The notes under the pieces: model-generated | The model's database searches: none | Seen by the model: the letters and a program-made list of their open reading frames with translations, nothing else | Told to the model about the DNA's origin: nothing | Position numbers and translations under genes: made by a program | Shown: one piece after another, positions 6,831 through 58,268 of the stretch | How positions within the stretch are numbered: position 1 is the first letter of the stretch | Layout: each line of letters begins with the position of its first letter | Source of the DNA: Botryllus schlosseri | Lineage: Eukaryota | Assembly (NCBI GenBank): GCA_051294905.1 | Contig: CM119374.1 | Coordinates: 21,638,001 to 21,702,000 of the forward strand | Length of the DNA stretch: 64,000 nucleotides | Reading direction: 5' to 3'

Positions 6831-7547
6831 ATGTTTAATAAACTTCACAGATGGAATGCTCCGGCTCCTCAAACCTACTCGGATGTCATCAATTCGCTAG
6901 AAGATGCAACTACGTTTAGCTTCACTGTCCGAAAAGAGCAGCGAGAGCCTTTCAGGCATACTTGCATCGAACTGCAATTCGACAATAAAGCCTGCTACAC
7001 CGTAAACCGACGGATACCCGACAAAACCTCACTGGCAGTGGCCGTGTTTGGAGCCGGTGCCGTTACCTACATCGAAAAAGCGAAGAGTGTTACATATCAA
7101 AACTGTGGGACGATATTCAAAAGTCAAAATAAATGGGAATCGGCAGCGGTCATAAGAAAATTACTGCAAGACGAACAAGAAGTATACAACCTTTGGGATA
7201 AAAATTGCCGAGACCATGTTACCAATATGGTGCTAAAAGCAATGAAAGACAAAACATGGGAATATACGTCGAGGTCTGACTTTTTAAATTTCGTCGAAAA
7301 AGTTCGGGAAGAAGACCGCCAGCGAGTCGCGGCCATTTTCATTTTTTACGCTTTTTCCATTTTACAAGTATCGTCTTCAATTTTTAGATTTAACGCCACT
7401 GTGGCATTAGCTTTATTTATATACGATAAATATTCGAGAAACATGATTACTTTGTTGGTGCTTTCGATAACGCCAGTAAACACGTTTAATACCGGTTTTA
7501 AAATGTGTTTCTTTCGCCAACTGCGAACTGTTGCTTCTATATTTTGA
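6831..7547 (+). CDS. Family copy A1: intronless permuted papain-like (PPPDE/DeSI- or LRAT-like) His-Cys protein with C-terminal membrane anchor, intact
   Basis: 238-aa ATG ORF. Motifs FRHTCIEL (His43) and YNLWDKNCRDH (Cys126); hydrophobic tail from residue ~166; TATATAAA at 6754-6761; AATAAA at 7647-7652; five paralogues in the window. Fold assignment is by motif resemblance only. Confidence 0.85.
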   Translation: MFNKLHRWNAPAPQTYSDVINSLEDATTFSFTVRKEQREPFRHTCIELQFDNKACYTVNRRIPDKTSLAVAVFGAGAVTYIEKAKSVTYQNCGTIFKSQNKWESAAVIRKLLQDEQEVYNLWDKNCRDHVTNMVLKAMKDKTWEYTSRSDFLNFVEKVREEDRQRVAAIFIFYAFSILQVSSSIFRFNATVALALFIYDKYSRNMITLLVLSITPVNTFNTGFKMCFFRQLRTVASIF

Positions 7548-7646
7548 ATGCTTCTGACAGTTAATTATTTCACCGACCAAGTGCGATTTTTACCAATCAA
7601 ATGTCCAGCTACTGTGTTATTCTATCACTGTGGTATTTATTACTCA

Positions 7647-7652
7647 AATAAA
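7647..7652 (+). terminator. Polyadenylation signal of A1 (equivalents at 40900-40905 and 52668-52673)
   Basis: AATAAA about 100-115 bp after the stop codon in all three intact copies. Confidence 0.6.
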
Positions 7653-8442
7653 TAATATTTTACACAAGAGACGCTACGTCTGCTGCAAAGTTTACCTATT
7701 GAAAACTAGATCATTATTCAACAAATGCCAGAATGAAACAGGGTTTCTGTCAATAGCAGTGGGTAGACTGCATGAGGATGAAGGGATATAGCATTGAGCA
7801 AAGCGGTTGCTATTCGCGACTGAAGTGTCTCATACACTTAGCTCTGTGAAACATCACTGGCTCCGAACCTCTGTATAGTGGTGCTCCAGTTTACCGTTTT
7901 GACAATGTTCCGTGGCCCGCCAGCTGACAATATGGGAAGATGTCTGTTTTTGAAAGATAGCCCCGAGTGGATAGGAGTTATAAATGAACCTTATATCACA
8001 TTTTATAAACCAGAACAATGCGCCAGCCTATATTTGGAGCGAATCCCCAAGAAAATCAGTTTAGTTGCTGTCGGATATACCTAATTATTATGTCCAAAGG
8101 GGAAGTCTGACCAAGTTTGTAAATTGATATGCATAGATAGAAGTTGATATCATTCGAGTAATCACACTTTAGGTGTCGGCATCCAGGGAGGCAAAGTTAT
8201 TGTGAAGTTTGAATTTCTTTAGAACGATATCTACCTCCAGACGATTCTACTAGTGATATACCGTCATTATAAGCCATTTGTTACGACAAAGAGTTCACTA
8301 CACTCAATTTCAATAATGCTTGCAATTAGAATGGGTATCATATTTGGCATGAATACACGATTGCCATTCACATATTTATTCAAAGAATCTATCTACATAG
8401 TTTAATTCGCGATTTGGAATCATCAGTCGCAATAATTACGAC

Positions 8443-9010
8443 CAGGGTTGTAATGACTCGAGTCCTACTCGAGTCACGATTTTCTGATGACTCGAATTGA
8501 CTCCAGTCAATTTTTCAAAATAGGGAAATGACTCGACTCGACACGAGTCAATCTGTGTATTGGCTCGACTTGGACTCGAGTCATTGCGTATGAATAGAAC
8601 CAAGTCATTGACTCGAGACTCAGACGGCCAAGAGCGACATTTCATTGTAATTCCGAAGCCAACACACTATTGAGATTGTGTCTGTTGGTACTGGTACTTG
8701 AAAATGCGACCAGAAACTGCTAGGAGTGAAGAAAATTGGTTTATTTTAAATGCGAACCATTCGATATCACCAAACAGAGTTATAAAAAGTGCGTTTACCA
8801 AGACGTTAACTTGAAACTAAGCAGTGAACACAATGACTTGGACTCGGACTCGAGTCATAATTCCATGACTCGGACTCGACCCTCTGCTCGCTGACTTGGA
8901 CTCGGACTTGACTCGGTGGTGAATTGAAATGACTCGACTTGACTCGAGTCCATACTATAAAAGTGAGATTGACTTGTGACTCGCAGCCTTGTAACTTGGT
9001 TACAACCCTG
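8443..9010. mobile_element. MITE with GACTCGAGTC subterminal repeats
   Basis: TIR CAGGGTTGTAA / TTACAACCCTG; many GACTC/GAGTC repeats; absent from block 2 (empty site ~53150). A related fragment lies near 41845-41975. Confidence 0.8.
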
Positions 9011-10938
9011 ATTAATACGACGGAAAAATTTCAGTAAATATGATTTGCTTTGTTTCAATATCAATAAGATTGATTAGTAGATGCGAAACCCCTAGTCTTC
9101 GACTGATCACATACTTGGATGGTTGATTTTGCAAAAAATGTATCTAATAATTCGAGTCCCTGAAAAGAGTAAATCCTCGACTGATAACTCTTTTTGAACC
9201 CACGCCTCCTCCAGGTATTAAGTAAATATAATTAGTACAGAATAACGTGTGAATTCAGCTCGATACAAATCTATAAGCGCAGTGAAATTAGTAAAAAACA
9301 GATGTGGTAAAGATGCCATATATAGTTTTCCACGCTAATATTCTTTCGTGTCTCGCAAAAGATTACGCTAAGTTTACACCAGCCCTCAAATGATGCCGAT
9401 TTAAAACCGCTGCATAACGCGTTGCTTGCGAAATACTAATATTAAATATTAAATACTATTCCTGTTAAAAGAGGATGTATATGGTAATCTTACCCTAATT
9501 ACTTATCGTTATCACCGGCGTCGAGCGTACGGAAGACGAGACTTGTTTCGCGCAATATACAATACTGAAGGACGACCTTACTATAGGAATAAGCAAGCGT
9601 ATGGTAACGTAACGAAAGTATGAAGTGTCTCAGCGTCTGGTATCTGAAGAATGCGCGAGCGTAACGGTGTCACTGCAACGTTAATTGAATTCTCGTAATC
9701 ACCAGCAGGTATACTATAGTGAATTTTGTGGAATGAATAATTGTAACACGTTTCTTTTACCCCGTCAGCGCGCAGAGTGGATGTATCACTGTACAGTACA
9801 CACTGTACACTGTATCATGACACAATTTTAGCGATTTGCCATTACGGAGAGGCACGCTCATAGTATGTCGAAATATCTTTTACAAAACGTCACTGCCATA
9901 TATATCGATGCCCCAATGATAAAAGTTCAAATTTCGGAGTGATTATGCACCTAATACCGTTATATACGATATTTACGTCAGTTGGTGTTATCTAATCTTC
10001 TATACCCGTGGTTCTCAAAGTGGGGGCGCGCACATTGGGTGGCGCGAAAGCATGTAAAGGGGGCGCACAGCCGCAGTCAACTGGAGATTTGATCGCGTTT
10101 TAGGCGATTTATCTCCAGCTCATTGTTATTGCTCTGTGTATAGACCGAATTCCATATTATATTGTTTACGTATGATCGGTATTTACACACTATGCAATGT
10201 GTGCACCACTGGTTCTCAACCCGGGCTCCGCGAAACCTCTTAATTTGTAAAATGGTTGAAAACCTAATTTGTATTTATTTAAATCAGGGAAATCATGAAG
10301 CAGTTTCGCTTCATAACGGCTAAAACGTCAGGACTAACATCAACAGAACTGTGTAAGTTCATTTTAATTGCCAAATTGGCAATAGCCTACTGATACGAAC
10401 ATATAGCTATTTCTAAATGTGTTTTTACAGTTTGTAAAAAATTAAAGAAAAAAGTTGGAGAAGTAAGGTCAATCATGGTGACCGCGAATATCTTTTTTTT
10501 CTCCGGTGATACACACAACGACACAACCTCTATTCCAAAATAACTTCAAGATGAGCTGCTAGAAAGAAATGACTCCAGGCTCAACGTTATATGTTCACTA
10601 AAATATGTTTCTCAATATCGCGCCACATATAGGCCTAGGCTGCGATTATAACCAAAGGTATAGTCGGAAGCGTTATGCGTTATGATTAGTAATGATTATA
10701 GTTTTGGTTTGTTGCATTTGCGTCATGCGGTTGTGGCAATCTAAGCATCCGTGGTAAGCTTGATAATTTTTTGAATGTATTTTTCAACTGCGTAAAAGGT
10801 TGCAAATCATATCAAAATGAATAACAGCATCAAAAGAAATAAAACGTAATTGTGTAATGAGATGCTGGGCAAGACGATATATCACACGTGTTCTACGCAG
10901 ATTTACCAATACGCCACTGTGGTTACGACTCTTTATTG

Positions 10939-11100
10939 TTGAATAGTATATTCACATTGAAATGAGCCCGAATATTTTTGGCTGACACTCGTCAGGGGTA
11001 ATCGTCAGCAACCAGTAGAGAATTAAAAAAAATCGTGTTCATTTCAATATGAATATACTATTCAATTGTATATTAAAGTTCTGTGCATCCTAGAAGTTGG
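10939..11100 (-). mobile_element. Penelope-like LTR fragment with mutated hammerhead
   Basis: ~85 bp near-identical to 31509-31593; absent in block 2; flanked by CTCTTTATTG/CTCTTTTTTG; internal 28-bp inverted repeat (10939-10966 vs 11038-11065); GAAA changed to AAAA. Confidence 0.6.
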
Positions 11101-11534
11101 CTCTTTTTTGATATAACAACTAAACAAGTAGAACATAAACAAAACGCTCTAGCCTGTAATAGTAAACCGTTAGCTGTTTGAGGTATTTAAAACATGAGAC
11201 AAGTTCCGCATATTATACAATGCAAATGACCGATATACATTGATTTATGATGTAGCAAGGGATATCTAGACGGCTACGTCACAGGGATACCTAGTTCTAG
11301 ATATCTCTGTGACGTAACTCAGCCGTCTCCGAATTACATCCTTCTTTCTACGCCGGTACAGTTGTTGGTAGCTAGGGAATGTGCCGAAAATAAGTGCATA
11401 CAAAACCGCGCGACGGTACTCTCTCGAATTGACCGGTATCACACGAATCTGGAGGGTATAAAAGAAGCACAAAATCAACATCTGTCGTCATTGGTTCACA
11501 CACGGTCGCACCGCCAACTGATTACTTCGTCATT

Positions 11535-11905
11535 ATGTTTCGCGAACTTCATCGACGGAGCTCTGACATGCCGCGAAATTGTTTTGATATTATATTCACA
11601 TTAGAGGAGTCTACGACTTTCTCGCTCACAATCCGCAAATAGTATGGCCCACCTATTCGACACACGTCAATAGAACTGCAATTCGACGGCAAAGCAAGCA
11701 ACACGGTAGATCGACGCATTGCAGCTCGCACAGTCACTCACATCGAGAACGCTAACGAAGTGACGTCGGAGAACTGCGGAATTGTGTTCCAGGGCAATGG
11801 CAAATATCATGTAACCCGTCCGGCAGTAACTGCAAAGACCTCGTCGCCACGACAGTGGCAAGAGAGATGGAAGGCAGACCCCAGAAATGGACATCATGGT
11901 ACGCT
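11535..11905 (+). pseudogene. Family copy B1, pseudogene
   Basis: ATG TTT CGC GAA CTT CAT CGA aligns with B2. Premature TAG at 11640-11642 (GAG in B2), an internal deletion near 11800, and a 3' end that is lost. Still reads IRHTSIEL and AAC TGC (NC) at 11828-11833; TATAAAA at 11457. Confidence 0.85.
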
Positions 11906-13672
11906 CGAACTCCTCGTTGGTACATCATTGGTACGAAATGGATGTTCTGATGATGATGACCGCCAACCGTAAAACTCTTGCATATCGATATAGTCCTGGT
12001 CGGGGACATCTTTTGGTCCTTTTAACGCGGGGTAGGAAGCCTTTTTCATTGAGCAGCCAGATTTACCATGTGTTTTCAATCGTCTTTGTCAATACAATGT
12101 GACGTCATAAACATACATTCGTGACGTCATTGCCAAAAATAACCCTGTTTCAAACACGTTTGTTTTAAATTGATTTTCGTTTTAAATGCAACCGTACTTC
12201 AGACCAATTAGTTTTACCAAAGCCTAGGCTTCCTAACTATGCTTTATAGACCCTGATTATTTGGAGGTTCCCGAAATGCAAATGTTTGAAATGATGTTTT
12301 GGCTATAGTTACCATATTTCAAGATCCGAGAAAGAGGTAACCCTCATAAAATTACAATAAGAGGGAAATTTGAGGGAAAATATCATCATAATGCAGATCG
12401 CCAGGTACTTTGACTAAAAGATTTAAAAAACAATACCACTTTCCGAGTCGATACCTCGAATCCGGTTTCCACGGACGGTTTCCGTTTGTTTTGACCTTTT
12501 TATCTTTCGTCAACCTCCGCGCGCCAGTTGACCTTTATATTCGTCTCTGTATGATTGCCTTACTCTTAAAACAAAACGAGAGGCATGATTACGAAAACTG
12601 AAGACATTTGGGCGTCATCGGAGGACATTTTAGTTTATTTGGCGTAATTATTTTAGTGCTGTGGAGAGACGCAGCGAACAATGCGAAATTGACAAATAAT
12701 TGATATCGGAGGGACATATCCATGCTCAATGCCCATGTCTCCGAAAATACCATTCTTGATCACCATCCAAATATTATGGGCGTCTCAACTAGATCCCCAC
12801 CGATGCGTACGCATGAGGAATATCTGTCTCAAGGTAAATATCGGTATCCACCGAGTCCGTATGGTATATATGGACCTGCCCAATGACGTCCTCACGCCTT
12901 CTATCGTGCTTCTTGGTCGTCCTTGCTATAAAACATCGGAAATTGCCAGTGCTAGAAAATGGGGATGACATGCGCCACTAACTACACCAGGACAATACAG
13001 GTGACTTGACGATCACGCTTCCTGAATCGCTATGATTCAACTTGCCGAGAACGAATAAGAAGCGTGCTTGTCTGTATCGCTTATTCGCAGATACTGTCAG
13101 ACCAGTCAGTACACGCCCGGGTAATTATGAAGTCTGATTTGAGGCTACCATCTCCGGGAATCTCTCCCGGTAAGCCAAAACATTGCGAGGTATGTGAGGA
13201 GTGAGGTGTTCCTTTTTTCATTGCCTTCCCGAAGACCGACGGATGAACATCATTGCAGTTTACTTATTGGTTAAAATACGGAAAGCTATTTTCCCTCAAC
13301 TATACGCCGCTTTAAATGCAAACGATAGTTTGTTTTACTCTATTGCAGTCTCATTGATGAATGAAGTTGATATGGGATTATGTAACACTTTGATATCGGC
13401 AGAAAATATCGATTTATTGGCCCAGTCTGGACTAAATTACTACTATCTTCTTAACTAGAGATAATATGTGACAAGTAAGTCGCAAAATAATGTATATAAC
13501 GGTTTTCTAGTCATACTTGCTGCGGTCTTCATATTTAAATGCGTTCGGTAGCTCATCGAAACCACCCAAGAGGCACAGGGAGTCGATGCATGTTAGTTTT
13601 AACGTAAGAGTGGTAAGACAATACTGAGCCTACAGAAGATCAACCACTGAGAGTGGCGGTCGCGGGTCTGGG

Positions 13673-14387
13673 ATGTTGGACAGAATCCACGAAATCGAAA
13701 ACGTACGAGGATATAGTCGAGTGCTTGCACAAATCCCCTGAGTTCAGTTTCACAGTTCGTAAAGAGAATTCAGAGCTTTTCAGGCACACCAATATAGAAT
13801 TACGTTTCGATGGCCAGGCGAGGTTTACTATCAACCGCAGGATACCGGACAAGACAGCGTTCGCTTCAGCCGTGCTAGGGACGCCGGCCGTTACTTACAT
13901 CGAAAAATCGAAGCAGACCGCCTCGGACAATTGTGGTACAATATTTACGAGCCGAGACCAAGATAAGTCGAAAGAGATGATCACAAATTTGCTACTTGAC
14001 CAAGAAATTAAATACAATCTCTGGGACAAAAATGGCAGAGACCACGTGACTAAAACAGTAATCAACGCGATGGCGGATAGCGATTGGAAGTATATTTCCA
14101 AATACGAATTTATAGACTTTGTTGAAAGAATACGGGAGGAGGACAGTAGACGCGTGGCCTTGTTGGCAATGTCGTACGTTGTACTCGTGTGCAGCATACC
14201 TGTCGCAATACTGCTGACCAGTGCTGGCGTACTAATTTTCAATTTCCTATTCGTCAAATACTCGCGAAACATTAAAACGTCTTTGATACGTTCGTTGTCG
14301 TTTTTTATATCGGAGTCCCTTTGTTGGAAAAGTGACATTGTGTCGCAGTGTCGATATATTTTGCTAACTTTTCGTTTAAGATTTTAA
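13673..14387 (+). pseudogene. Family copy C, probable pseudogene (5' frameshift, catalytic Cys to Gly)
   Basis: ATG at 13673 reads MLDRIH (cf. MFDKLH) but is out of frame with the long ORF through an apparent 14-nt deletion. There is no in-frame ATG upstream (TAA at 13614). NC is replaced by NG (GGC at 14034-14036). AACAAA (14452) lies where paralogues have AATAAA. Confidence 0.7.

Positions 14388-24922: not shown

Positions 24923-24925
<3 letters not shown>

Positions 24926-24956
<31 letters not shown>
24926..24956. repeat. (TG)n microsatellite
   Basis: About 15 perfect TG units. Confidence 0.95.
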
Positions 24957-36440: not shown

Positions 36441-36448
36441 GTCTAGAC

Positions 36449-39400
36449 CAGTGGTTCCCAACCTGGGGGTAAATTACCCCCCGGGGGTAATTTGGCATTT
36501 TTGGGGGGGTAAAAAGGGGTCGGATTTTAAGTAAAAAAATAATTGTTGTATTCATTGTTTTCTTCGTACTTTTGTGAAAAAAAATATAAAAATTCAAAGG
36601 TGACTTTCGTCAGTGGGTGTGCACAGCTTTTCCAAACTTCATAATGGCGCCGTCCTATCATAGCAATTTACAGCGTAGCTGGCATGGAGAGTTCCATCTG
36701 AATACGATCGATGTTGTGGTTTACAGCGACACCTATCGCTAGCGTAATACTTTTTAGCCGTCATTCAGATTTCAGAACAGAGATGTAAACATTAGCCGTA
36801 CTAACGCTGTCTTCCGATACTTGTGGAGATCATTTCAATAGTTGCTAAATTAGGATATATAAAAGCAATGTTTTCTTCTGTGTGATGACTGCATCTATTC
36901 TGCTGAAGCAGATTCCGAGTGTACATTATTCCAACGAGTGGAACCTGCCTGATTTTTTACATTCTGTATATTTATATCCAGTTATTGCAAATACTCCAGA
37001 AAGAACATATTTACAGTGGCCATAATGTGACAACTTGATTGAACAGTGAGCAGTCCGAGCACTTATGTATGAACTACAGACTGACAATATGTGAACCAAG
37101 AATGAGTGCAAATTTTGCTGACCTAACTATAAAAGTTGAAATTCCAACTGCAACTCCATACGCTGACAGATCAGTGACATCATTTTTCCAAAAATAGTCA
37201 AGTAACTTCTTCTACGATGATATGCGGAGGCTTCTGTGTTATACCGTGTATTTATCGACGGTTGTGTAAATGCGCATTGCGCAACGACGTGAACTACCGT
37301 ACTGGTATTGGGATACGCGTTACAGCACGGCTCATCTCCGCTCAGTGGCGTCACAATCATACGAAAAGTTAATCGGCGATTGTCGGCCGGCGACCCCATT
37401 GTGTGAAACAATGACGATTTAAGACTTTGAAGTCAAATTTCAGAGGGTTTCAGTTCCCGGGCCGGATTTCCACTTATGTTTTTGGAATCAGTGCGAAATT
37501 TGCTTTCGATTGATACCAGTTTCATTTACTTTTGTGCTCTGGTCCCAGCTGGAAGATTACCCAGAAACACACTAAAGCAGGTTGAAGCAGCAGCATCTGT
37601 ACGCCACCACTGGAGGCAGTGCAAAACGCAACATTGCTTACGGAGTTTCCATGCCAGCTACGCTGTAAATTGCTATGGTCCTATACTTCTTGAAGTTGTT
37701 TTTTTTCCTCCGTGACTGCTCTCATAGCTCATAGGTCAGTTTATAATTGAGTTTGTTAGAGATTTTATTCTTTGTGTGATAAAAGTTCCTTATTACCACA
37801 TTACTTCACCTTAGCATTTGATGCACTCTAATCATCCGCTTTTTACGCTCCTCAGAAGAACTGTCATTATGCCGGGCAAGAAGCGACATTATGCAGAGGC
37901 GTTTTTGAATCACGGCTTTGTAAACACACCACAACTGAATGGTGACGATCGACCACAGTGTGTCATTTGTCTCAAAGTTTTGACCAACGAAAGCCTAAAG
38001 CCGTCAAAACTGAACGAGCACCTCATGAAGCGTCATCCGCTACTGGCCGGAAAGAGTCGAGGATACTTTGAGGGCAAATCGAAGCAACTTCGAGGCATTC
38101 AATTTGGATCAGGTGGCATGGCTTCGGAGAAGCTAACGGCCGCTGTTGAAGTTTCGTACGAGGTGGCATACCGAATTGCAAAAAGTTCCAAGAACCACAC
38201 AATCGCAGAAGACCTTATTATGCCTTGTACCAAGTTGATCGTTTCCAAAATGTGTGGGGAAGATCAGGCCAAGAAGCTGGAAGGAGTATCAGTCTCGAAC
38301 ACCACAATTCGAAGAAGGGTTGATGATCTTGCAGCTGACATCCTTGCCCAAGTCGTTGCCGAAGTGAAGGCAAGTCCTCACAAAATGTTTTCTCTCCAGT
38401 TCGATGAATCCACGGATGTAAGCAGCTGCGCAGTTTTACTCGGATACGTTCGATACATTCACGAGTACTCTGTCAAGGAGGAATTTTTGCTTGCCAAGAA
38501 CTTGAAGACAACAACGAAAGGAGAAGATATCTTCAACCTTGTGAACGATTTCTTGGGCATGCACGGTTTGGAGTGGAACAATGTGCAGCAAATCTCTGTT
38601 GACGGCTGTCCCGCTATGATGGGTGGAAACCGCGGTTTCAGGGGCTTTGTGCAGCGGGAAAACTCGGACATTCATGTGGATCATTGCGCACTGCACCGCT
38701 ACTCGCTTGCGTCCAAATCTCTGCCGGAGAGCTTGAAAATAGTGTTCGACCAAGCAGTGAAGGTTGTAAACTTCATAAAAGCGAAGGAGTTGAACAGTCG
38801 TCTTTTCAAGGAACTGTGCAAGGAGATGGGGCAAAAATATGAGGCATTACTGTACCACACAGAGGTGCGATGGCTATCTCGTGGCAAAGTGATCACCCGT
38901 TTGTTTGAACTTCGTGAGGCTGTTGAGATTTTCTTGATAGAAAAGAAGTCGGGCTTGGCCGAATACTTTTCAGACCCCCATTGGATTGCCCAGCTTGGCT
39001 ACCTGGCCGATATTTTTGTTGAGTTGAACAAAGGGAATCTGTCAATTCAAGGCAAGTGTGTGACTGTGATCCACTCGAAAGAAGCTGTAGCAGCATTTAT
39101 CGCGAAGATGAAGTTGTGGATTAAGCGGGTCAACAGAGGTGTACTGGCACAGTTTCCAACGCTCGACATGTATCTCGAAGGCCTGGAGACAGAGAATGAA
39201 CCCGACTTCACAGAGGCGTTGAAAGGGAACATAGCTGACCACTTGGGACAGCTAGTCGAGAAAATGGAAGAATATTTTCCGGATTTGGACACCACTAACA
39301 TGGGATGGCTAACTGAACCGTTCAGGTGTCTTGACAGCCAAGTGGACGACGATGACTTTCCCGCCAAGGAGGAATTCATCGCCCTCAGAATGAGTGAGGC

Positions 39401-39975
39401 CTTGAAAATTGATTTCAAAGAAAAGAATTTGGATGCATTCTGGATAGAAAGACTTCAGGATGCACCAACATTGGCCACACGGGCATTGAATGTTCTCATC
39501 TCCTTTTCGACATCATATCGTTGCGAACAAGGATTTTCGACCATTGTAGGGTTGAAAACCAAAAAGCGGAATCGCCTGGATGTCGAAAACGACGCAAGAA
39601 TTGCCCTCAGTACAACCAAACCCAGAATTGCAAAGCTAGTGGTAGATATGCAAGCTCAACCTTCGCACTGATTGAATATTATCTTTGTCATTCCACGACA
39701 GTTGTCTTGGTGTTTGCTATCCCTTGCTTGCATTTGTTCCTTGGCAACGAACGTCTGCAGCCTTTTTCCACTGATAAACCAATTTATTTCTCTTTCAAAC
39801 TTGATGTCGCTTTTTCTCAGGTCGGTCTCTCCCTCAGGTAAAACTCCCATCCTGGACTGGACGATCGTTTTTGAGTGTTTAGTGATGAAACGTGGTTTTG
39901 ATGGAAGAGGGGGGTAAAAACCTGTCTGGAAAGTCTGGTTTTGGGTAACGGGGAGAAAAAGGTTGGGAACCACTG
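36449..39975 (+). mobile_element. Autonomous hAT DNA transposon, Buster subfamily
   Basis: 16-bp perfect TIRs CAGTGGTTCCCAACCT / AGGTTGGGAACCACTG; perfect 8-bp TSD GTCTAGAC (36441-36448 and 39976-39983, nnnTAnnn); full transposase ORF inside. Confidence 0.97.
37869..39671 (+). CDS. hAT (Buster/ZBED5-like) transposase, intact
   Basis: BED finger CVIC...HLMKRH; FSLQFDESTD (D); ISVDG (D); HCALH; RWLSRG; RCEQGFS (E); no stops. 600 aa from MPGKKRHY; an in-frame ATG also exists at 37821. Confidence 0.95.
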   Translation: MPGKKRHYAEAFLNHGFVNTPQLNGDDRPQCVICLKVLTNESLKPSKLNEHLMKRHPLLAGKSRGYFEGKSKQLRGIQFGSGGMASEKLTAAVEVSYEVAYRIAKSSKNHTIAEDLIMPCTKLIVSKMCGEDQAKKLEGVSVSNTTIRRRVDDLAADILAQVVAEVKASPHKMFSLQFDESTDVSSCAVLLGYVRYIHEYSVKEEFLLAKNLKTTTKGEDIFNLVNDFLGMHGLEWNNVQQISVDGCPAMMGGNRGFRGFVQRENSDIHVDHCALHRYSLASKSLPESLKIVFDQAVKVVNFIKAKELNSRLFKELCKEMGQKYEALLYHTEVRWLSRGKVITRLFELREAVEIFLIEKKSGLAEYFSDPHWIAQLGYLADIFVELNKGNLSIQGKCVTVIHSKEAVAAFIAKMKLWIKRVNRGVLAQFPTLDMYLEGLETENEPDFTEALKGNIADHLGQLVEKMEEYFPDLDTTNMGWLTEPFRCLDSQVDDDDFPAKEEFIALRMSEALKIDFKEKNLDAFWIERLQDAPTLATRALNVLISFSTSYRCEQGFSTIVGLKTKKRNRLDVENDARIALSTTKPRIAKLVVDMQAQPSH

Positions 39976-40067
39976 GTCTAGACACTAGGGATATCAGTTC
40001 ACTGAATAATAAAGAAACAACAGAATATAGTAAATAGAAAGCATCTCTCATACTACACATATTGGTA

Positions 40068-40784
40068 ATGGTTAATAGCCTGCTTTTATGGTCAGCTCCA
40101 CAATCTCATACCTACGACGATATCGTGGAACACTTGATGAAATCGACCACGTTCAGTTTCACAGTGCGCAAAGAAGCACGCGAGCCTTTTAGACACACCA
40201 GCGTCGAGCTACTGTTCGACGGAAAGCCACGCTTCACGGTGAACCGGCGAATTCCAGACAAAACACATATTATTTTCGCAGCGTTCGGAGCACCCGCGAT
40301 TACGTACGTCGAAAAAATCAAAGCAACTCCAACTTTTAATTGCGGAGAAATATTCCGAAGTACAAACAAAGACGAAGCGAAGATGGTGATTAAGAACTTG
40401 CTCGATGACCCAGAAGTAGAATATAAGTTGTGGGAAACGAATTGCCGCGACCACGTCACAAAGGCTGTTCTGAAAGCCATGCAAGGCAAGAAATGGAAAT
40501 ATACCTCAAAACAAGAATGTCTGGACTTCATCTTGCGGGCACGCATGGAGGACAGCAGAATCGTGTCTGCCATGACCATAATTTATGCACTAATTCTTTT
40601 TAATTTATCGGCAAGCCTCATTTTTCTCAATATTGGCGCATTGGCATTTAGTCTAATATTGAGCCACACCTGCCGCACCATGGCCGCCAAATTGGTGGAC
40701 GTTGTTGCAGTCACCTTGTCGATGGACAGCGAGAAGTTATATCAAGGTTCTTTTGCGATAGGGAATAAGTCTTATTTGGATTAA
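40068..40784 (+). CDS. Family copy D, intact ORF (238 aa from ATG 40068)
   Basis: FRHTSVEL and YKLWETNCRDH motifs intact; hydrophobic tail; AATAAA at 40900-40905; a hAT element ends 92 bp upstream of the ATG. Confidence 0.85.
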   Translation: MVNSLLLWSAPQSHTYDDIVEHLMKSTTFSFTVRKEAREPFRHTSVELLFDGKPRFTVNRRIPDKTHIIFAAFGAPAITYVEKIKATPTFNCGEIFRSTNKDEAKMVIKNLLDDPEVEYKLWETNCRDHVTKAVLKAMQGKKWKYTSKQECLDFILRARMEDSRIVSAMTIIYALILFNLSASLIFLNIGALAFSLILSHTCRTMAAKLVDVVAVTLSMDSEKLYQGSFAIGNKSYLD

Positions 40785-50175: not shown

Positions 50176-50521
50176 ATCCGAGTGACCAATCGTATAAAAT
50201 ATGTTTTATCGACTCAACGTGAGTGAGTGTTATTGCTTCATTGTTACGTATGATATTTCTAGAGTACAAAAATACACTTATTATGCAATGTAAGTAATGA
50301 TACAACAATACTTCCAATAATATATCAGTGCAACGTGACTGACCTGACATCCGAGTGACCAATCGTATAAAATATGTTTTATCGACTCAACGTAAGTGAG
50401 TGTTATTGCTTCATTGTTACGTATGATATTTCTAGAGTACAAAAATACACTTATTATACAATGTAAGTAATGGTACAACAATACTTCCAATAATAAATCC
50501 GTGCAACGTGACTAACTTGAC
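50176..50521 (+). repeat. 173-bp tandem duplication
   Basis: atccgagtgaccaatcgtataaaa... starts at 50176 and 50349; single copy in block 1 (~5449-5625). Confidence 0.9.
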
Positions 50522-51695: not shown

Positions 51696-51775
51696 AACGA
51701 GACTTTCCCGGTATGTATCCGACGGAACGAGAGTTTCCGAGTACCACGCGAGAAAAAGGGGCGCAAGTATATAAA
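51696..51775 (+). promoter_or_regulatory. Putative core promoter of A2
   Basis: AACGAGACTTTCC (51696), AACGAGAGTTTCC (51726) and TATATAAA (51768). Confidence 0.55.
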
Positions 51776-51850
51776 TCAGGCTGAGTTTGGTGCGAGCGAG
51801 TCTAATATACGGAATCAGCTACAATCGGCGCTACTAAAAGAGTATAGAAA

Positions 51851-52567
51851 ATGTTTGATAAACTTCACAGGTGGAATGCTCCGGCTTCTCAAACCTACAC
51901 TGATGTCATTAATTCGTTAGAAGATGCAACTACGTTTAGCTTCACTGTCCGTAAAGAGCAGCGAGAGCCTTTCAGGCATACTTGCATCGAACTGCAATTC
52001 GACAATAACGCCTGCTACACCGTAAATCGACGGATACCTGACAAAACCTCATTGGCAGTAGCGGTGCTCGGAGCCCGTGCCGTCACCTACATCGAAAAAG
52101 CGAAGAGTGTGACGTCTCAAAACTGCGGGACGATATACAAAAGTCAAAATAAATTGGAGTCGGAAGCGGTCATAAAAGTATTACTGCAAGACGCGGAAGA
52201 AGTCTACAACCTGTGGGATAAAAATTGTCGAGATCACGTCACAACCATGGTGCTTAAAGCAATGAAAGACAGAACATGGGAATATACGTCGAAATCTGAC
52301 TTTTTGAATTTCGTCGAAAAGGTCCGAGAAGAAGACCGCCAGCGAGTCGCGGCCATTTTTATTTTCTACGCTTTTTCTATTTTACAAATATCTTCAGCAA
52401 TTTTTATTTTCAACGCCGCTACGGCCCTAATATTATTTCAATACGATAAATATTCAAGAGACATAATCACTTTATTGGTGCTCTCCATAACGCCTTCAAA
52501 CACGCTTAATATCGGTGCTAAAATGGGTTTATTCCACAAACTGCGAGCTGTTACTTCTATATTTTGA
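51851..52567 (+). CDS. Family copy A2, intact
   Basis: 238 aa, about 85% identical to A1 (36 differences by my count). His and NC motifs intact; TATATAAA at 51768-51775; AATAAA at 52668-52673. Confidence 0.85.
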   Translation: MFDKLHRWNAPASQTYTDVINSLEDATTFSFTVRKEQREPFRHTCIELQFDNNACYTVNRRIPDKTSLAVAVLGARAVTYIEKAKSVTSQNCGTIYKSQNKLESEAVIKVLLQDAEEVYNLWDKNCRDHVTTMVLKAMKDRTWEYTSKSDFLNFVEKVREEDRQRVAAIFIFYAFSILQISSAIFIFNAATALILFQYDKYSRDIITLLVLSITPSNTLNIGAKMGLFHKLRAVTSIF

Positions 52568-55500
52568 ATGTTTCTGACTGTTATTTATTTCACCGACGAA
52601 GTGCAATTTTTTACTTATCAATTGTCCAGCTACTGTGTTATTCTATCACTGTGATATTTATTACTCTAATAAATATTATTTTATACAAGCGACGCTGACT
52701 TCTACTGCAAAGTTTACTTATCGGAAACTTGAGCATTATTCAGCAAATGCCAGGATAAAACGTGCTGTCTTTGCGTAGCAGTGTGAAGATTGCATGAAGG
52801 GGAAGTGTGACCAAATTTGTGAAATTATATGCATAGATAGAAATTATTATCATTCTAGTAATCAAACTAGCATACATGTCAGCTTTCAAGAAGACGAATT
52901 TACTGTAAAGCTTGAATTTCTGTAAATGGATCTCCACTTCCAGAGATTTCAGACGATTCTACTGGTGATAGACCGGCATTGCTAAGCCATTTGTTATGAC
53001 AAAGACTTCACCAGACCGGATTTCATTAATGATTGCAATTTGAATGGTTATCAATTTCGGCATAAATACACAATTGTCATGCAGATATTTATTTAAAGGA
53101 TCCATCAGTATAGTTTAATTACCGATTTGGAATCATCAGTCGCAATAATTACGACGGCGGGATAAATTTTAGCGAATATGATTTGTTTTGTTTGAATTTG
53201 AATAAGATTGATTAGTAGATGCGAAGCCACTGGTTTTCGACTGATCACATATTTTAAGGGGTAGTTATGCAAAAATGGTATTTATTAATTCGATCCCCCC
53301 AAAAGACTAAATCCTCGACTAATAACTCTTATTGGACCCACGTATTCTCCAGGCAATAAGTAAATAAAATGAGTACAGAAGGACGAGTGTATTCCGCTCA
53401 TGCCAAATCCAAGCGCAGTGAAATCAATATAAAACAGATGTGTTAAACATGACATATATTTTTTTCACAGACGCTAATATTCGTTCGTGTCCCGCAAGGG
53501 AATAAGCTATACTTACACTAGTCCTCAAAATGATGCCGATGTCTAACCGATGCATAACGCGTTGCCTGCGAAATACTAAGCTAAATATTGTTTAGTTAGG
53601 CATATAATGTAAACCGTCTCTATGGGACATGCTCTGACTCTCTTACTTGAAAATGATGTCGGCGAATTTATTCTATAGTTTCATGCGAGTGCCATGGCCA
53701 AATGCGATCTTGCACGTACCTGGTGTACATGCCGCTTATGTGTAGTACGGGATATTGCCTGTTATTGTGGGCATGTATCTCCCAGATGCCGAATTTTACA
53801 CTAGCTTATTAGTTGGTATGCATAACGTATCTAGGCTGAGACGATGCTTTATGCCGGAAGGCCGGAAAAGGACGACTTATTCGTGGTATTGCTGCAAAGA
53901 CACTATTTGTGCGCTAAGAATGTCCCTTATGTGGAAAGGAGTTATGCCTGCTTCAAAAGGTTATAATAAATCTGTCACGTTAGAGGCGGGGCTTCAGCAA
54001 TACTACTACAGCAACTGAACTAGCTTATGATCTAGCAACTAACACAGATAGAATATAAACAAAAGCGCTAATTACTTATCGTTATCACCGGCGTCGAGCG
54101 TACGAAATACGAGACCTGTTTCGCGCGAAATACGATACTGAAGGACGACCTATCTATAGGAATAAGAAAACGTAGGGTAAGGTAACGAAAGTATGACGTG
54201 TCTCGGCTACATTTATTACTCTAGCGCCTGGTATCTGTGGAATGCACGGGGGTCAACCGCGTAATCGCGACGATAGATGAAGTATCATAATCTCCGGCTA
54301 TACTAGTGAAATTTGTGTATAGCATAATAGCAACATGTTACCCCTAATTCGTAGAATCCCCTAAATGCTAATTTTGTCGTACATATATCGTGGTTATATT
54401 TTATAAACTCCACCTGCATAACGAGGTACTTTTTGCGACATCCTGTTATTCCTGGAAACTAAACGACGTTCTTTTACACCATCTGTGCGCATATAGTATA
54501 TGGGCGCTCCATTATGACATAATTCCATCGATTTGCAGTTACGGAAAGGCACTATCATAGTAAATCGAGACATCATGTACAAAACGCCATTGCCATATGT
54601 CTCATTTCTTCGTGATATCGACTCATATTGTTGTTATTGTTTATCGAAAGAAAATCTTGGCGCTTGATCACCAGTTGGATCGACTCATTGAAGCGGATCT
54701 AATGGTTTGCGTCGATATGTGTTGCATCGAAAATAAACAGCACTGGAAGTACACAAAATCAGCATTACATATGTGAGAAAGTGCAGGATATAAAAGGACG
54801 AGATTAATTCCATCATATATTGTAATTGGTAATTGAAACTTGACATCACTACTGTAATGTATTTCCGATGAACAGTTCTGCACGGAGACGAAGACGATTT
54901 AGGTCACCAAAGCAATTGGTGTCATTGTAGGCGACAGTGGGACATTCGAAGGTGTGTTTTTGTCATGTGAATCGAGGGGTGTTGACGTGCGATCGGTATC
55001 TATACACTATGTATCGTGTACACGATGTAATAGGTTACGCTTGTACCATAGCGCAGTGGACAAAATACAGTCACTTGTTTCTCATGGGTAATTAATTGAG
55101 ATATACAATGTAGTTTTACATACAAGCCATATCGGAAGCAGGAATGTTAATATGCGCGATAGCTTTGTAGACTAAGCAATATATCTTTACGTGCGTCTGC
55201 CATAGCCACAACCAAGATATTCATATCTCGCAGCCCATTCTGATAATATGACGGGATACCAGTCGGATACGTCAGCGCTTTAACTTAACAACAACAAAGG
55301 TATGTGTGACGGACTAAATCTTTCATTAACAAATTATAACCTTTTAGTTACCCGCATCTGGCCGTCACGAAATTCAGGGATTCGTGTCACATGTTGCTCT
55401 GAATAATTTACCCTTTTAGCGTGTTATTCTGCTGATCGGACCCTTGTTCGCGACAAACCTGGCACGAGGCGCACCAGACCGTTCGCGGTGATAAGCGCCA

Positions 55501-55838
55501 CCTCATTTTGTAGTATCTATAATAATCTTACAATCATTAATTGGTGTTTAGATTTGTGGTTATCGCATTCGGCTGTCTGATTGCATTCGCTATTAAACTA
55601 TCCCGACCATGTAGCTTTATCATAAATTAAGTCTCCGCTAAATCATTTGTAGTACTATTATGTAACAGGTAGTAATTGCATACCAAGATGTATCAATCCT
55701 TGTTAGGCGGTAAGCGCCAATATCGACTTTTAGAATAGAATTTTAGAATACTACCAATACTGTCCAGTACCGTGATTTGGTATAAAAAAAAGTGACAGAA
55801 ACGGGTTTCTGTTGGGTTTAGGTCTTCTTTGTTACTTC

Positions 55839-57070
55839 TAGAGGTGGTCAAAGTAGTCAAGAAAGCTACTCAAGTAGAAGTAGAAGTAGTCATGAAAAAA
55901 TCTACTAAAGTACGAGTAGAAGTACTTGTTCAATTAGCCACCTAAATTTACTTGAAGTAGAAGTAGATTTGAGTGACTTTAAATCTACTCAAGTAAGTAA
56001 GTAGTTTTGAAAACGGTCCTAATTCGTTCACATGGATTGTCAACAGCTGCGAATTGAGCTGTGCGGAAGGTGCAGAGAGCTTGATTCGTATTGATGAATC
56101 CCAGGAGAAGGTATCAATTTTCGACGGATGAGCATTTTTTTCGCATCACAGGATGCAAATTATAGTATTGATATGAAAATGCGATACTAACCCTTTGTTT
56201 ACTGGAAGAATATCATGGCATGGTGCCCTACCCCATATTATAAGGCCCCAAGTTTAGGCGCAGAGCAATACGTAGAAGTTTTATCGAATACTCTTTCATC
56301 ACTTTGTGTGATTAGTATACGTTAATAACAAATATTGTGGACCGTAAAAAAGTTATATTTATTTTAGCTTTATTTTCGGAAAATAGAGGCAATACAAGAC
56401 TTGCTTTAATGCTTCAACATGTATGTTCTGCAGACAAAAGAAATGCAAGTTATTAGAACTCAAAGTATGATACTCGCAATTGAAAGTGAAATACAAATAA
56501 CACTTCTAAAAAGCGGAAACTAAATTTCATGTTTTTCGTCCATGAAGCTTCAAAGGTGATCTGCTAAAACAGGTGTAACATGTAATGGGCTGCTAGATTA
56601 CGATATGATTTGTAATTGCTAGATTGCGAAATGGTAGTTTCAAACGTTACGGTGGGCCATGTCTACTGTGATGAAATATTTGATATGGGCAACAATGCGG
56701 TGTGAGCGGAACCAAGCAATCCCGTACCTTAATTATATTCACTGATACTTCCCTGAAAACATATTTGTCCATCATAACTACTGTGCGCGAAGGGCAACAA
56801 AATTCCTAGGCTTTACTTGACTTTTTTGAATATTAAATCTTGTTAATCCGTGAAAACAGCTCCGTAAGTCCTAAGGCTATCTTTCGTATTGGGGGATTAA
56901 ACTACTTCTACTTGACAAACTGAAAATAGCGAAAAGTAAGTAAGTAGATCACAAAATATTACGAAGTAGAAGTAAAGAAAATCTGATCTACTGGAGTAAG
57001 TACCAGAAGTAGATGAAAACTACTTGAGTACTTCCAAAAAGTAGAAGTACTTCGTTACTGATCACATCTG
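55839..57070. mobile_element. MITE with AAGTAG subterminal repeats
   Basis: Ends TAGAGGTGGTCAAAGTA / TTACTGATCACATCTG; TSD-like GTTACTTC/CTTACTGC; related fragments at ~17265-17380, 31102-31313 and ~60450-60505. Confidence 0.7.
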
Positions 57071-57767
57071 CTTACTGCATAATATGTACCTGTCTTCGGT
57101 TTACCTATTTCGGTTGGATCTTGAATGCAACGTTGTACAACGTAGAATCCGTGCAGCATAAATATAATAGAATATGACAGACAATTGAAGTTTGCTAATA
57201 TTTATCTACACATGCCTGATTTTTTTAATGTGCTGTTGGAATATGCAAAAGGTTGCGAAGCATATCAAAATAAATAACAGCATCATAATAAATAAGACAT
57301 AATTGCTCTCCGGAACGTTATGAGATGCTGAGCAAAACTTAACACCACACGCGTGTTCGACGCAGAGTTACCTATATACTACTACAGTTACGACCCTTTA
57401 TTGACGAAACAATTAAACAAATAGAATATAAACAAAATGCTTGATGCGATAGTAGTAAACCGTTACCTGTTTGAAGTATGAAACATGAGACAATAGGTCT
57501 CTAGAACTAGAACTAGATAGGTCTCTAGAACTAGATATCCCGATGACGTATACCGCAACCGCCTCCGATTACTTTTTCTTTCTACGCCGTTGTGGTTGTG
57601 GTATCTCTGGAATGTGCCGGAAATAAGTGCATACAAAACCGCGCGACGGTACTCTATCGGATTGACCGGTATCACCTGAATTCGGAGGGTATAAAAAGAG
57701 TACGGAATTGAAATCTGTCGTCATTGGTTCACACACGGTCGTACCGCCGCCTGATAACTTCGTCAGT

Positions 57768-58268
57768 ATGTTTCGCGACCTTCATCGACGGAACTCTGCC
57801 AAGTCGCGAAGTTATGTCGATATTATATCAACGTTAGAGGAGTCGATGAGTTTTGCGTTCACAATCCGCAAAGAGAATGGCGAACCAATTCGACACACGT
57901 CAATAGAACTGCAATTCGACGGTAACGCACGATACACGGTAGATCTGCGCATCGCAGCCCGCACTGTTACTTACATCGAAAACGATAGCGAAGTGAGGTC
58001 GGAGAACTGCGGAATTGTGTTCCAGAGCAATAACAAAGTCGAATCGAAAGCAGTAATTGACAAACTGCTTTGGGGAGACGGAAAAATGTTGTTATACAAT
58101 CCGTCGGAAAATATCGGCAAAGACCGCGTCGCTACGACTGTAGCAAGAGCGATGGAAGGCAGACCCTGGAAATGGACTTCTAAGCAAAAGGTTTTTGAAT
58201 TTATTGAGAGCGCCCGCACGGAAAATAGTAGAAGAGCGGGACTGGTTGTAATAGCTTGCATTGCATAA
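57768..58268 (+). CDS. Family copy B2: open 166-aa ORF, catalytic NC changed to IG, C-terminal tail truncated (pseudoenzyme or decaying gene)
   Basis: The ATG at 57768 (MFRDLHRR) is the homologous start. IRHTSIEL retained; YNPSENIGKD aligns to YNLWDKNCRD; stop falls after only ~8 hydrophobic residues; TATAAAAA at 57690. Confidence 0.6.
   Translation: MFRDLHRRNSAKSRSYVDIISTLEESMSFAFTIRKENGEPIRHTSIELQFDGNARYTVDLRIAARTVTYIENDSEVRSENCGIVFQSNNKVESKAVIDKLLWGDGKMLLYNPSENIGKDRVATTVARAMEGRPWKWTSKQKVFEFIESARTENSRRAGLVVIACIA

What the first reader, a model, noticed from the sequence alone, without database searches (positions are those of the whole stretch)
6831..58268. Birth-and-death array of six intronless, membrane-tailed PPPDE/LRAT-like His-Cys proteins
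Seen: six co-oriented single-exon paralogues (6831, 11535, 13673, 40068, 51851, 57768) sharing F-T-[VI]-R-K-E..RHT.[IV]EL.FD, NCG.[IV]F, Y.LW..NCRDH and, in the full-length copies, a hydrophobic C-terminus with no signal peptide. Established: His-first/Cys-last order with HT[SG][IV] and Y-x-L-x-x-x-N-C marks permuted NlpC/P60 papain-like enzymes. These include PPPDE/DeSI deubiquitinases and deSUMOylases, and LRAT/PLAAT acyltransferases and phospholipases, which are C-terminally anchored. Inference: this is a lineage-specific, rapidly turning-over family of cytosol-facing, tail-anchored proteases or lipid acyl-hydrolases. Intronless tandem expansion with mixed intact, dead and truncated copies is typical of innate-immune or defence effector loci. 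I do not recognise it as a named family, and it is the best candidate for an undescribed system here.
Basis: partly seen in the sequence, partly recalled or inferred. Interest (0 to 1): 0.85.

Follow-up and report, generated by a model that had tools for sequence, protein, structure and literature searches.

The report
New membrane-anchored papain-like enzyme gene cluster
A sea-squirt-type genome carries a cluster of six copies (three intact, three damaged or altered) of an unnamed gene family. Its proteins fold like the known "permuted papain-like" His/Cys enzymes that cut or move fatty-acyl groups at membranes, so this is a new family of a known kind, not a new kind of system.

Summary
tblastn finds exactly six family loci in the window, all on the + strand.

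- **Intact copies:** A (6831), D (40068) and B (51851), each 238 aa.
- **C (13673):** dead. A 14-nt deletion puts the conserved ATG out of frame, and the Cys is now Gly.
- **psi (11535):** dead, with a stop codon, deletions and a frameshift.
- **F (57768):** lacks both the Cys and the membrane anchor, but its ORF is open. A 70%-identical counterpart in another sample has the same ends.
- **Origin of two pairs:** A+psi and B+F arose by one ~12-kb segmental duplication.
- **Evidence for real genes:** A versus B gives dN/dS 0.21, and copy A is transcribed at a low level without internal splicing.

No Pfam model reaches its cut-off. A high-confidence core model (pLDDT 91.7) nevertheless matches only permuted NlpC/P60 enzymes at the top of the structure searches: CLN5 (Z 8.9), Aichivirus 2A, DeSI, TseH, PLAAT2-4 and YiiX.

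Across 46 relatives the motifs R-H, F-D, Y-x-L-x-x-x-N-C-R and E-D are nearly invariant, and a single hydrophobic segment follows. The Cys sits at a helix N-terminus.

The immune-effector idea was not tested, and "lineage-specific" is only partly right. I did not find this family noted elsewhere in the scan.

The parts
6831..7547 (+). Copy A: intact 238-aa gene with His43, Tyr119, Cys126 and one hydrophobic segment at 166-184
   Evidence: ORF and translation. dN/dS against copy B is 0.21, and 0.13 in the core. RNA-seq reads and RNA contigs cover 6267-7700, the unique flanks are silent, and there are no internal joints.
11535..11896 (+). psi: pseudogene of the F type, with a stop at codon 36, about 52 nt deleted and a frameshift. 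It shares F's 11-aa deletion.
   Evidence: It is 84% nt identical to F. RNA depth is essentially zero.
13673..14387 (+). Copy C: the conserved ATG (13673) is thrown out of frame by a 14-nt deletion. The remaining ORF (13653-14387) is open, but Cys126 is Gly (N-G-R-D-H). Probably a recent pseudogene.
36441..39983 (.). Context, not part of the family: a hAT transposon with perfect 24-nt terminal inverted repeats and an intact 617-aa transposase ORF (37818-39671). It ends 84 nt upstream of copy D's ATG.
   Evidence: (Dimer_Tnp_hAT)
40068..40784 (+). Copy D: intact 238-aa gene, 44-45% identical to A, B and C. This is the protein that was modelled.
   Evidence: RNA-type runs hold a small share of its words.
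51851..52567 (+). Copy B: intact 238-aa gene, 85% aa and 87% nt identical to A
57768..58268 (+). Copy F: open 166-codon ORF (the frame is open from 57708). It has no catalytic Cys, an 11-aa deletion, and stops before the membrane segment. A 70%-identical counterpart (P0008) in another sample has the same ends.
360..11804 (+). Segmental-duplication block 1, carrying A and psi
   Evidence: Self-blastn: colinear with 45271-58037 at 77-89% identity
45271..58037 (+). Segmental-duplication block 2, carrying B and F

Best explanation
The window holds a tandem array of six single-exon paralogues of an unannotated animal protein family. [quoted passage not shown]

Each intact protein (A, B, D) has about 165 N-terminal residues forming the catalytic domain. 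His43 sits at the start of a beta-strand. Tyr119 lies seven residues before Cys126, and Cys126 sits at the N-terminus of a helix. A juxtamembrane E-D motif and one hydrophobic membrane segment follow. There is no signal peptide, so the catalytic domain should face the cytosol.

By analogy with every characterised relative, Cys126, activated by His43, would attack an acyl carbonyl and form a thioester intermediate. That intermediate is then resolved by water or by an acceptor. Given the PLAAT-like 'domain plus C-terminal anchor' layout, the likeliest substrates are membrane phospholipids or lipid-modified proteins. That would mean phospholipase A or acyltransferase activity, or thioesterase activity.

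Shown here: the six copies, their state, the duplication history, purifying selection on A and B, low-level transcription of A, the fold class and the conserved residues. Inferred: the chemistry, the substrate and the topology.

Copy F, which lacks both the Cys and the anchor, may be a retained soluble pseudoenzyme.
For: - **Six loci:**
- **Duplication:**
- **Selection:** dN/dS A vs B is 0.21 (core 0.13) at dS 0.39.
- **Transcription of A:** raw RNA-seq X20 gives depth 1-4 per mate orientation over 6700-7700, zero in unique flanks and about zero on psi. RNA contigs of X1 and X2 are colinear over 6267-7141 at 97-100% identity, with no joints.
- **Fold:** the core model has pLDDT 91.7 and pTM 0.87, with Cys at the first residue of helix 119-130 (core numbering) and His just before strand 37-43.
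- **PDB matches:** VIA-align over 48,161 PDB representatives ranks CLN5 at Z 8.9 (144 of 159 residues), Aichivirus 2A 7.3, DeSI 7.0, TseH 6.3, PLAAT4 6.1, YiiX 4.9 and BcPPNE 4.3. The 16 best re-aligned Foldseek candidates are all of this fold. PLAAT3 aligns model 22-133 to chain 9-125 at 19-20% identity, which puts the His near PLAAT3 residue 23 and the Cys near residue 113.
- **Other libraries:** AFDB clusters named LRAT, PPPDE or C92 match at E 1e-4 to 5e-3. The ESM Atlas and BFVD give the same fold class.
- **Sub-threshold Pfam hits:** these recur on one superfamily. Peptidase_C97 appears in 5 of 25 members and in 7 of 10 further members. LRAT, TseH and RTE1 (the TMEM222 family) also appear. 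The hits cover the Y-x-L-x-x-x-N-C segment.
- **PDB sequence search:** the only hit is a PPPDE protein at that same motif.
- **Conservation in 46 relatives:** His43 46/46, Arg42 43, Asp51 42 (+4 Asn), Tyr119 40 (+6 Phe), Asn125, Cys126 and Arg127 45 each, Asp162 45.
- **Anchor:** one hydrophobic segment follows the Cys in nearly all members, and none lies at the N-terminus.
- **Literature:** permuted members act on lipid or lipidated substrates and are often membrane-targeted (PMC3142127). CLN5 and the PPPDEs are Cys/His thioesterases (PMC9012467). Cluster II of papain-like enzymes groups C97, C92, LRAT and TMEM222 (PMC10318531).
Against: - No sequence model of a known family reaches its curated cut-off. 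The best scores are Peptidase_C97 at 21.8 bits against 29.2 and LRAT at 19.8 against 24.3.
- Foldseek against the PDB gives only E about 0.3.
- VIA Z values of 7-9 are, by the tool's own note, within the range that unrelated models can reach. The argument therefore rests on the exclusive enrichment of one fold class, not on a single score.
- The His-Cys distance in the model could not be read.
- The third catalytic residue is unresolved (Asp51 or Asp64).
- No enzymatic, localisation or topology data exist.
- Window copies have a 40-50-residue tail after the hydrophobic segment, so the topology could be more complex.
- Expression of A is low, and it was absent from a second run (X22).
Confidence: 0.65

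Rival explanations
1. Same fold, different job. The proteins are membrane-tethered isopeptidases (deubiquitinase or deSUMOylase, as first proposed for PPPDE/DeSI) that remove ubiquitin-like modifiers from membrane proteins. They would not be lipid acyl enzymes.
For: The most frequent sub-threshold Pfam hit is Peptidase_C97/PPPDE. DeSI (2wp7) matches at Z 7.0. The only PDB sequence hit is a PPPDE-domain protein.
Against: PPPDE1 and PPPDE2 show only weak DUB/deSUMOylase activity but high S-depalmitoylase activity (PMC9012467). Permuted members generally have hydrophobic S1 pockets for lipid (PMC3142127). The C-terminal anchor mirrors PLAAT/LRAT rather than DeSI. PLAAT3 gives the highest structural-alignment identity, at 19-20%.
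Confidence: 0.15
2. The array is evolutionary debris or a non-enzymatic family. The ORFs would be relics of a retrocopied, transposon-borne or viral gene with no present catalytic function, and the conserved His and Cys would serve structure or metal binding.
For: Three of the six copies are damaged or lack the Cys. A hAT transposon lies 84 nt upstream of D. Expression of A is low. The genes are single-exon.
Against: dN/dS is 0.21, and 0.13 in the core, between A and B at dS 0.39. The motifs are near-invariant across 46 relatives. The hAT inverted repeats exclude D. No transposon Pfam domain was found in any copy or in the neighbours on related contigs. No relative was found in IMG/VR or in bacterial and archaeal genomes. 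The duplication is a 12-kb two-gene segment, not a mobile unit.
Confidence: 0.08
3. The fold assignment is a model artefact. The family would have a different alpha+beta fold that merely resembles permuted papain-like domains.
For: Foldseek PDB E-values are about 0.3. The aligner's own note says best Z values of 7-8 occur for models without true relatives. The alignment behind the model has only 24 sequences.
Against: Independent lines agree. Sequence-only sub-threshold hits fall on the same superfamily and the same motif. Language-model features point to PPPDE, LRAT, CLN5 and RTE1. Four structure libraries give the same class. The invariant residues fall exactly where that fold has its catalytic His, Tyr and Cys.
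Confidence: 0.07

Closest known systems
PLAAT/HRASLS 1-5 and LRAT (Pfam LRAT, PF04970): phospholipase A / acyltransferases
   Same: - Permuted His-then-Cys order.
- The Y-x-L-x-x-x-N-C motif, with Cys at a helix N-terminus.
- A small N-terminal catalytic domain followed by a C-terminal hydrophobic membrane anchor, with no signal peptide.
- Structural matches at Z 5.1-6.1 with up to 20% identity.
   Different: - It does not reach the Pfam LRAT cut-off: best 19.8 bits against 24.3.
- The motif is N-C-R-[DH]-[HNY], not N-C-E-H-F.
- The invariant Arg42 before the His, the F-D motif at +8 and the juxtamembrane E-D are family-specific.
- PLAAT's second His (+12) is not evident.
- Window copies have a 40-50-residue tail after the membrane segment.
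CLN5 (PF15014; PDB 6r99): lysosomal Cys/His thioesterase, annotated as a bis(monoacylglycero)phosphate synthase
   Same: It is the best structural match, at Z 8.9 with 144 of 159 core residues aligned. Its His/Tyr/Cys active-site pattern, with an acidic residue orienting the His (PMC9012467), has plausible counterparts here: His43, Tyr119, Cys126 and Asp51 or Asp64.
   Different: CLN5 is a glycosylated protein described as lysosomal in PMC9012467, and it has extra N- and C-terminal domains. This family has no N-terminal hydrophobic segment and a C-terminal anchor, so it should face the cytosol. Identity is 10%, and no sequence-level hit was found.
PPPDE/DeSI (Peptidase_C97, PF05903)
   Same: It is the most frequent sub-threshold sequence hit, always on the Y-x-L-x-x-x-N-C-x-x helix. 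DeSI matches at Z 7.0. It shares the His-Tyr-Cys arrangement.
   Different: The hits stay below the gathering score: best 21.8 bits against 29.2. The Pfam hits cover only the Cys segment of the PPPDE profile. DeSI (2wp7) was solved as a 158-residue chain with no membrane segment, whereas this family has a C-terminal hydrophobic anchor.
Picornavirus 2A H-box/NC proteins (Aichivirus, parechovirus)
   Same: Same permuted fold, at Z 7.3-7.4. These are viral copies of the PLAAT-like domain.
   Different: They are parts of viral polyproteins. No close viral relative of this family was found.

Membership tests
Permuted papain-like NlpC/P60 superfamily (PPNE) | The catalytic His lies N-terminal to the catalytic Cys in the sequence, and both are conserved | tested here: met
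   His43 is present in 46/46 and Cys126 in 45/46 relatives. This is also seen.
Permuted papain-like NlpC/P60 superfamily (PPNE) | Cys at the N-terminus of an alpha-helix packed on an antiparallel beta-sheet, with His on a beta-strand | tested here: met
   In the core model (pLDDT 91.7), Cys119 (core numbering) is the first residue of helix 119-130 and His36 immediately precedes strand 37-43.
Permuted papain-like NlpC/P60 superfamily (PPNE) | Fold similarity to solved members | tested here: met
   Seven of the 8 best of 48,161 PDB representatives are members, at Z 8.9-4.3. The 16 best re-aligned Foldseek candidates are all members. AFDB LRAT, PPPDE and C92 clusters match at E 1e-4 to 5e-3.
Permuted papain-like NlpC/P60 superfamily (PPNE) | A conserved Tyr ahead of the Cys (oxyanion or P1 contact) | tested here: met
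   Tyr119 is present in 40/46 and replaced by Phe in 6/46, within Y-x-L-x-x-x-N-C.
Permuted papain-like NlpC/P60 superfamily (PPNE) | A polar third residue that orients the His | tested here: inconclusive
   The candidates are Asp51 (42 Asp, 4 Asn) and Asp64 (20 Asp, 13 Asn, 3 Glu). Which one contacts the His cannot be read without coordinates.
Permuted papain-like NlpC/P60 superfamily (PPNE) | His and Cys side chains adjacent in three dimensions | not testable with these tools
   Model coordinates are not exposed. There is only indirect support from the PLAAT3 alignment ranges.
Pfam Peptidase_C97 (PPPDE) | Score at or above the gathering cut-off (29.2 bits) | tested here: not met
   The best score among 45 scanned members is 21.8 bits. 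The window copies give no hit at E <= 1.
Pfam LRAT / PLAAT | Score at or above the gathering cut-off (24.3 bits) | tested here: not met
   The best is 19.8 bits (P0015). The window copies give no hit.
Pfam LRAT / PLAAT | Catalytic domain followed by a C-terminal hydrophobic membrane anchor | tested here: met
   There is one hydrophobic segment (Kyte-Doolittle 19-residue window mean >= 1.6) about 35-45 residues after the Cys in nearly all members.
CLN5 | Signal peptide or signal anchor, with a luminal glycoprotein topology | tested here: not met
   No N-terminal hydrophobic segment: the maximum hydropathy over roughly the first 40 residues is 0.1-0.2 in A, B and D.
Tail-anchored proteins | A single membrane segment close to the C-terminus (within about 30 residues, from general knowledge) and no signal peptide | tested here: inconclusive
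   Distant relatives end 2-20 residues after the segment. The window copies A, B and D have 40-50 further residues, with a second weakly hydrophobic stretch.

The most novel reading that the evidence does not exclude
The family is an undescribed class of cytosol-facing, membrane-anchored acyl-hydrolases or transferases that has expanded in tunicates. The active paralogues would attack or remodel organelle or pathogen-associated membranes, as PLAATs do. The conserved soluble copy F, which lacks the Cys, would act as a pseudoenzyme regulator or decoy. Together they would form a fast-evolving effector/regulator locus in invertebrate-chordate defence or self/non-self biology.
Probability: 0.12. 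Interest if true: 0.65.

Novelty: new member of a known kind. Interest (0 to 1): 0.42.

Why it matters
It adds an unannotated animal family to the permuted NlpC/P60 enzymes. That group includes PLAAT phospholipases, LRAT and the Batten-disease protein CLN5, and the substrates of many members are still debated.

The family has a clear, testable active site (R-H, Y-x-L-x-x-x-N-C-R) and a PLAAT-like anchor. The cluster shows active copies, fresh pseudogenes and a possibly retained Cys-less soluble paralogue side by side. That makes it a compact case for studying how such enzymes diversify.

It does not reveal a new mechanism or system. For genome annotation, it gives a functional class to proteins that are currently 'uncharacterized', for example barnacle LOC122370725.

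Tried and rejected
- **Pfam on the window copies:** no relevant hit even at E <= 1.
- **PDB sequence searches:** phmmer found nothing. The profile searches gave one irrelevant hit and one weak PPPDE hit.
- **First full-length model:** pLDDT 76, built from 9 sequences. It gave only noise plus weak PLAAT1 and Cln5-like hits, because the long C-terminal helices dominated. I replaced it with a core-only model built on 24 sequences.
- **Foldseek against the PDB with the good model:** still E about 0.3. The fold call rests on VIA-align, AFDB and the Atlas.
- **Viral origin:** the IMG/VR scan found no relative, and BFVD gave only weak matches of the same fold. Rejected.
- **Recent bacterial transfer:** the GTDB genome scan found nothing. 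This scan finds close relatives only.
- **Transposon cargo:** rejected, because the hAT repeats end 84 nt before copy D and the other copies have no transposase neighbour.
- **Naming the organisms of relatives:** cluster look-ups gave only one name, a barnacle. Contig look-ups for P0035 and P0039 found nothing. DNA for P0005 and P0008 was unavailable, so dN/dS of F against its counterpart could not be computed.
- **Rfam and tRNA scans of the window:** nothing found.
- **Literature search for a prior description in tunicates:** nothing relevant.
- **Alignment A4:** too diverse for the locus scan.

Full report
**1. What is in the sequence**

The six-frame ORF list shows five long + strand ORFs with clearly related translations: 6831-7547, 13653-14387, 40062-40784, 51851-52567 and 57708-58268. 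A broken sixth copy lies near 11535. tblastn with 31 family proteins finds exactly these six loci and no others, all on the + strand.

A (6831) and B (51851) are 85% identical in protein. The others are 44-45% identical to A.

Self-comparison shows that 360-11804 is colinear with 45271-58037 at 77-89% nucleotide identity. A+psi and B+F are therefore the products of one ~12-kb two-gene segmental duplication. The array reads [A, psi] - C - about 25 kb of repeats and a hAT element - D - [B, F].

**2. State of each copy**

- **A, B and D** are intact 238-codon genes.
- **C** keeps the ATG that aligns with every other copy's start (13673). A 14-nt deletion immediately after it shifts the frame, so the long ORF (13653-14387) has no ATG. 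Its Cys126 is Gly.
- **psi (11535)** has a stop at codon 36, about 52 nt deleted and a frameshift. It shares F's 11-residue deletion, so that deletion predates the segmental duplication.
- **F (57768)** has lost the Cys (N-I-G-K-D-R) and ends nine residues into the hydrophobic segment, yet its 166 codons are open.

P0008, a protein from another sample, is 70% identical to F over the whole ORF. It has the same ends, three in-frame indels and also no Cys. The two form a 100/100-supported clade, with the shortest between-sample distance in the tree.

A substitution-only simulation gives F a 3-11% chance of staying open by luck at the divergence estimated for this duplication. F may therefore be a retained soluble pseudoenzyme. 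This is not settled, because the DNA of P0008's contig was not available.

**3. Real genes?**

A versus B gives dS 0.39 and dN 0.08, so dN/dS is 0.21. It is 0.13 in the catalytic core and 0.39 in the tail. Both copies have been under purifying selection since the duplication.

In raw RNA-seq run X20, of which about 6% was read, reads cover 6700-7700 at depth 1-4 per mate orientation. The unique flanks (6100-6699, 7700-8299, 9100-10099) read zero, and psi reads essentially zero. No joints fall inside the gene.

Contigs from RNA-type runs X1 and X2 lie colinear on 6267-7141 at 97-100% identity. These three runs come from different studies. Run X22 shows nothing on A. Copy A is thus transcribed at a low level, apparently unspliced, and not in every sample.

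A distant relative (P0020) occurs as near-identical ~1-kb contigs in ten runs, which look like transcripts.

**4. What the protein is**

No Pfam model matches the window copies, even at E <= 1. A profile search of 1.84 billion representative proteins finds only 21 clusters. A second search finds 21 proteins, none with a functional name. The only named member is 'uncharacterized protein LOC122370725' of the barnacle Amphibalanus amphitrite.

Across 46 Cys-bearing relatives, conservation is as follows:

| Residue | Count |
|---|---|
| His43 | 46/46 |
| Arg42 | 43/46 |
| Asp51 | 42 Asp + 4 Asn |
| Tyr119 | 40 Tyr + 6 Phe |
| Asn125, Cys126, Arg127 | 45/46 each |
| Asp162 | 45/46 |

Sub-threshold Pfam hits recur on one superfamily. 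Peptidase_C97/PPPDE appears in 5 of 25 members and in 7 of 10 further members, with a best score of 21.8 bits against a cut-off of 29.2. LRAT reaches 19.8 bits against 24.3. TseH and RTE1 also appear. The hits cover the Y-x-L-x-x-x-N-C helix.

RTE1 is the TMEM222 family, which PMC10318531 places in the same papain-like cluster II as C97, C92 and LRAT. The only PDB chain found by the family profile is a PPPDE-domain protein, at that same motif (E 0.45). Language-model features point the same way, to PPPDE, LRAT, CLN5 and RTE1.

**5. Structure**

The full-length model built on nine sequences was mediocre (pLDDT 76) and gave noise. A core-only model (residues 8-166 of D) built on 24 diverse relatives is confident, with pLDDT 91.7 and pTM 0.87. 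In it the conserved Cys is the first residue of a helix, and the conserved His immediately precedes a beta-strand. That is the papain-like arrangement in permuted order.

VIA-align against 48,161 PDB representatives ranks the following:

| Match | Z |
|---|---|
| CLN5 (144 of 159 residues aligned) | 8.9 |
| Aichivirus 2A | 7.3 |
| DeSI | 7.0 |
| TseH | 6.3 |
| PLAAT4 | 6.1 |
| YiiX | 4.9 |
| BcPPNE | 4.3 |

These are seven of the top eight matches. The 16 best re-aligned Foldseek candidates are all permuted NlpC/P60 proteins. PLAAT3 aligns model 22-133 to chain 9-125 at 19-20% identity. By simple offset, this puts the family's His at about PLAAT3 residue 23 and its Cys at about residue 113. 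From general knowledge, His23 and Cys113 are PLAAT3's catalytic residues.

AFDB clusters give LRAT, PPPDE, C92 and DUF4105 proteins at E 1e-4 to 5e-3. The ESM Atlas and BFVD give the same fold class and no close relative.

Each single score is modest. Foldseek against the PDB gives E about 0.3, and the aligner's own note warns that Z 7-8 can occur by chance. The conclusion rests on the exclusive enrichment of one fold class, on the agreement of independent sequence and structure lines, and on the invariant residues sitting at that fold's catalytic positions. I could not read the His-Cys distance directly, because coordinates are not exposed.

**6. Membrane anchor**

Nearly every member has one hydrophobic segment 35-45 residues after the Cys and none at the N-terminus. 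Distant members end 2-20 residues after it, which is classical tail-anchoring. A, B and D carry 40-50 further residues. This domain-plus-C-terminal-anchor layout is that of PLAAT and LRAT.

**7. How it most likely works**

By analogy with characterised members (PMC3142127, PMC9012467), Cys126 is activated by His43, with Tyr119 at the oxyanion or P1 position. It would form an acyl-thioester intermediate on a lipid or lipidated substrate at the cytosolic face of a membrane. The chemistry, the substrate and the topology are all inferred.

A membrane-tethered ubiquitin or SUMO isopeptidase is the main rival. Debris or transposon cargo, and a wrong fold, are less likely.

**8. Origin**

The hAT element (24-nt perfect inverted repeats at 36441-36464 and 39960-39983, with an intact 617-aa transposase) ends 84 nt upstream of D's ATG and does not contain it. 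No relative was found in IMG/VR or in bacterial and archaeal species genomes.

In a related sample, two members of different subfamilies lie 7 kb apart on one strand. Clustering is therefore not unique to this genome. Earlier notes of this scan describe the genome as a sea-squirt type, which I did not verify.

**9. Verdict**

The fold inference is supported. The family is unannotated but belongs to a known kind of enzyme with a known architecture. The immune-effector reading was not tested. Interest is moderate.

Noticed in passing
window 36441-39983: An apparently intact hAT transposon: perfect 24-nt terminal inverted repeats and an open 617-aa transposase ORF (37818-39671) with a hAT dimerisation domain. 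It is inserted 84 nt upstream of copy D's start codon and may affect D's promoter.
   Followed up: partly
window 8300-9100 and 10900-11100: Short stretches with very high summed depth in RNA-run contigs (thousands) and many partial or joined reads. These are probably dispersed short repeats (MITE- or SINE-like) present in many transcripts. They lie inside the duplicated block between copy A and psi.
   Followed up: no
window 2052-3316, 34450-35747, 29190-29994 (-), 25074-25589 (-): A repeat of about 1.3 kb is present in at least four places at 66-83% identity. The copy at 2052-3316 interrupts duplication block 1 relative to block 2.
   Followed up: no
L002 4561-5457 and 12425-13348: On a 14-kb contig from another sample, a close family member (P0006) lies 7 kb from a member of the divergent 'N-C-R-H-H, Phe for Tyr119' subfamily (307 aa, 31% identical to D), on the same strand. 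The two subfamilies are therefore also clustered elsewhere.
   Followed up: partly
window 31536-31579: Another first-stage note proposes a minimal hammerhead ribozyme here. The Rfam gathering-threshold scan of the whole window returned no family at all.
   Followed up: partly
window 57708-57767: The reading frame of copy F is open for 20 codons upstream of its ATG, and P0008 from another sample has a similar upstream extension (M-K-S-[VL]-V-I-G-S...). This may be conserved 5' sequence or a gene-caller artefact from a non-ATG start.
   Followed up: no
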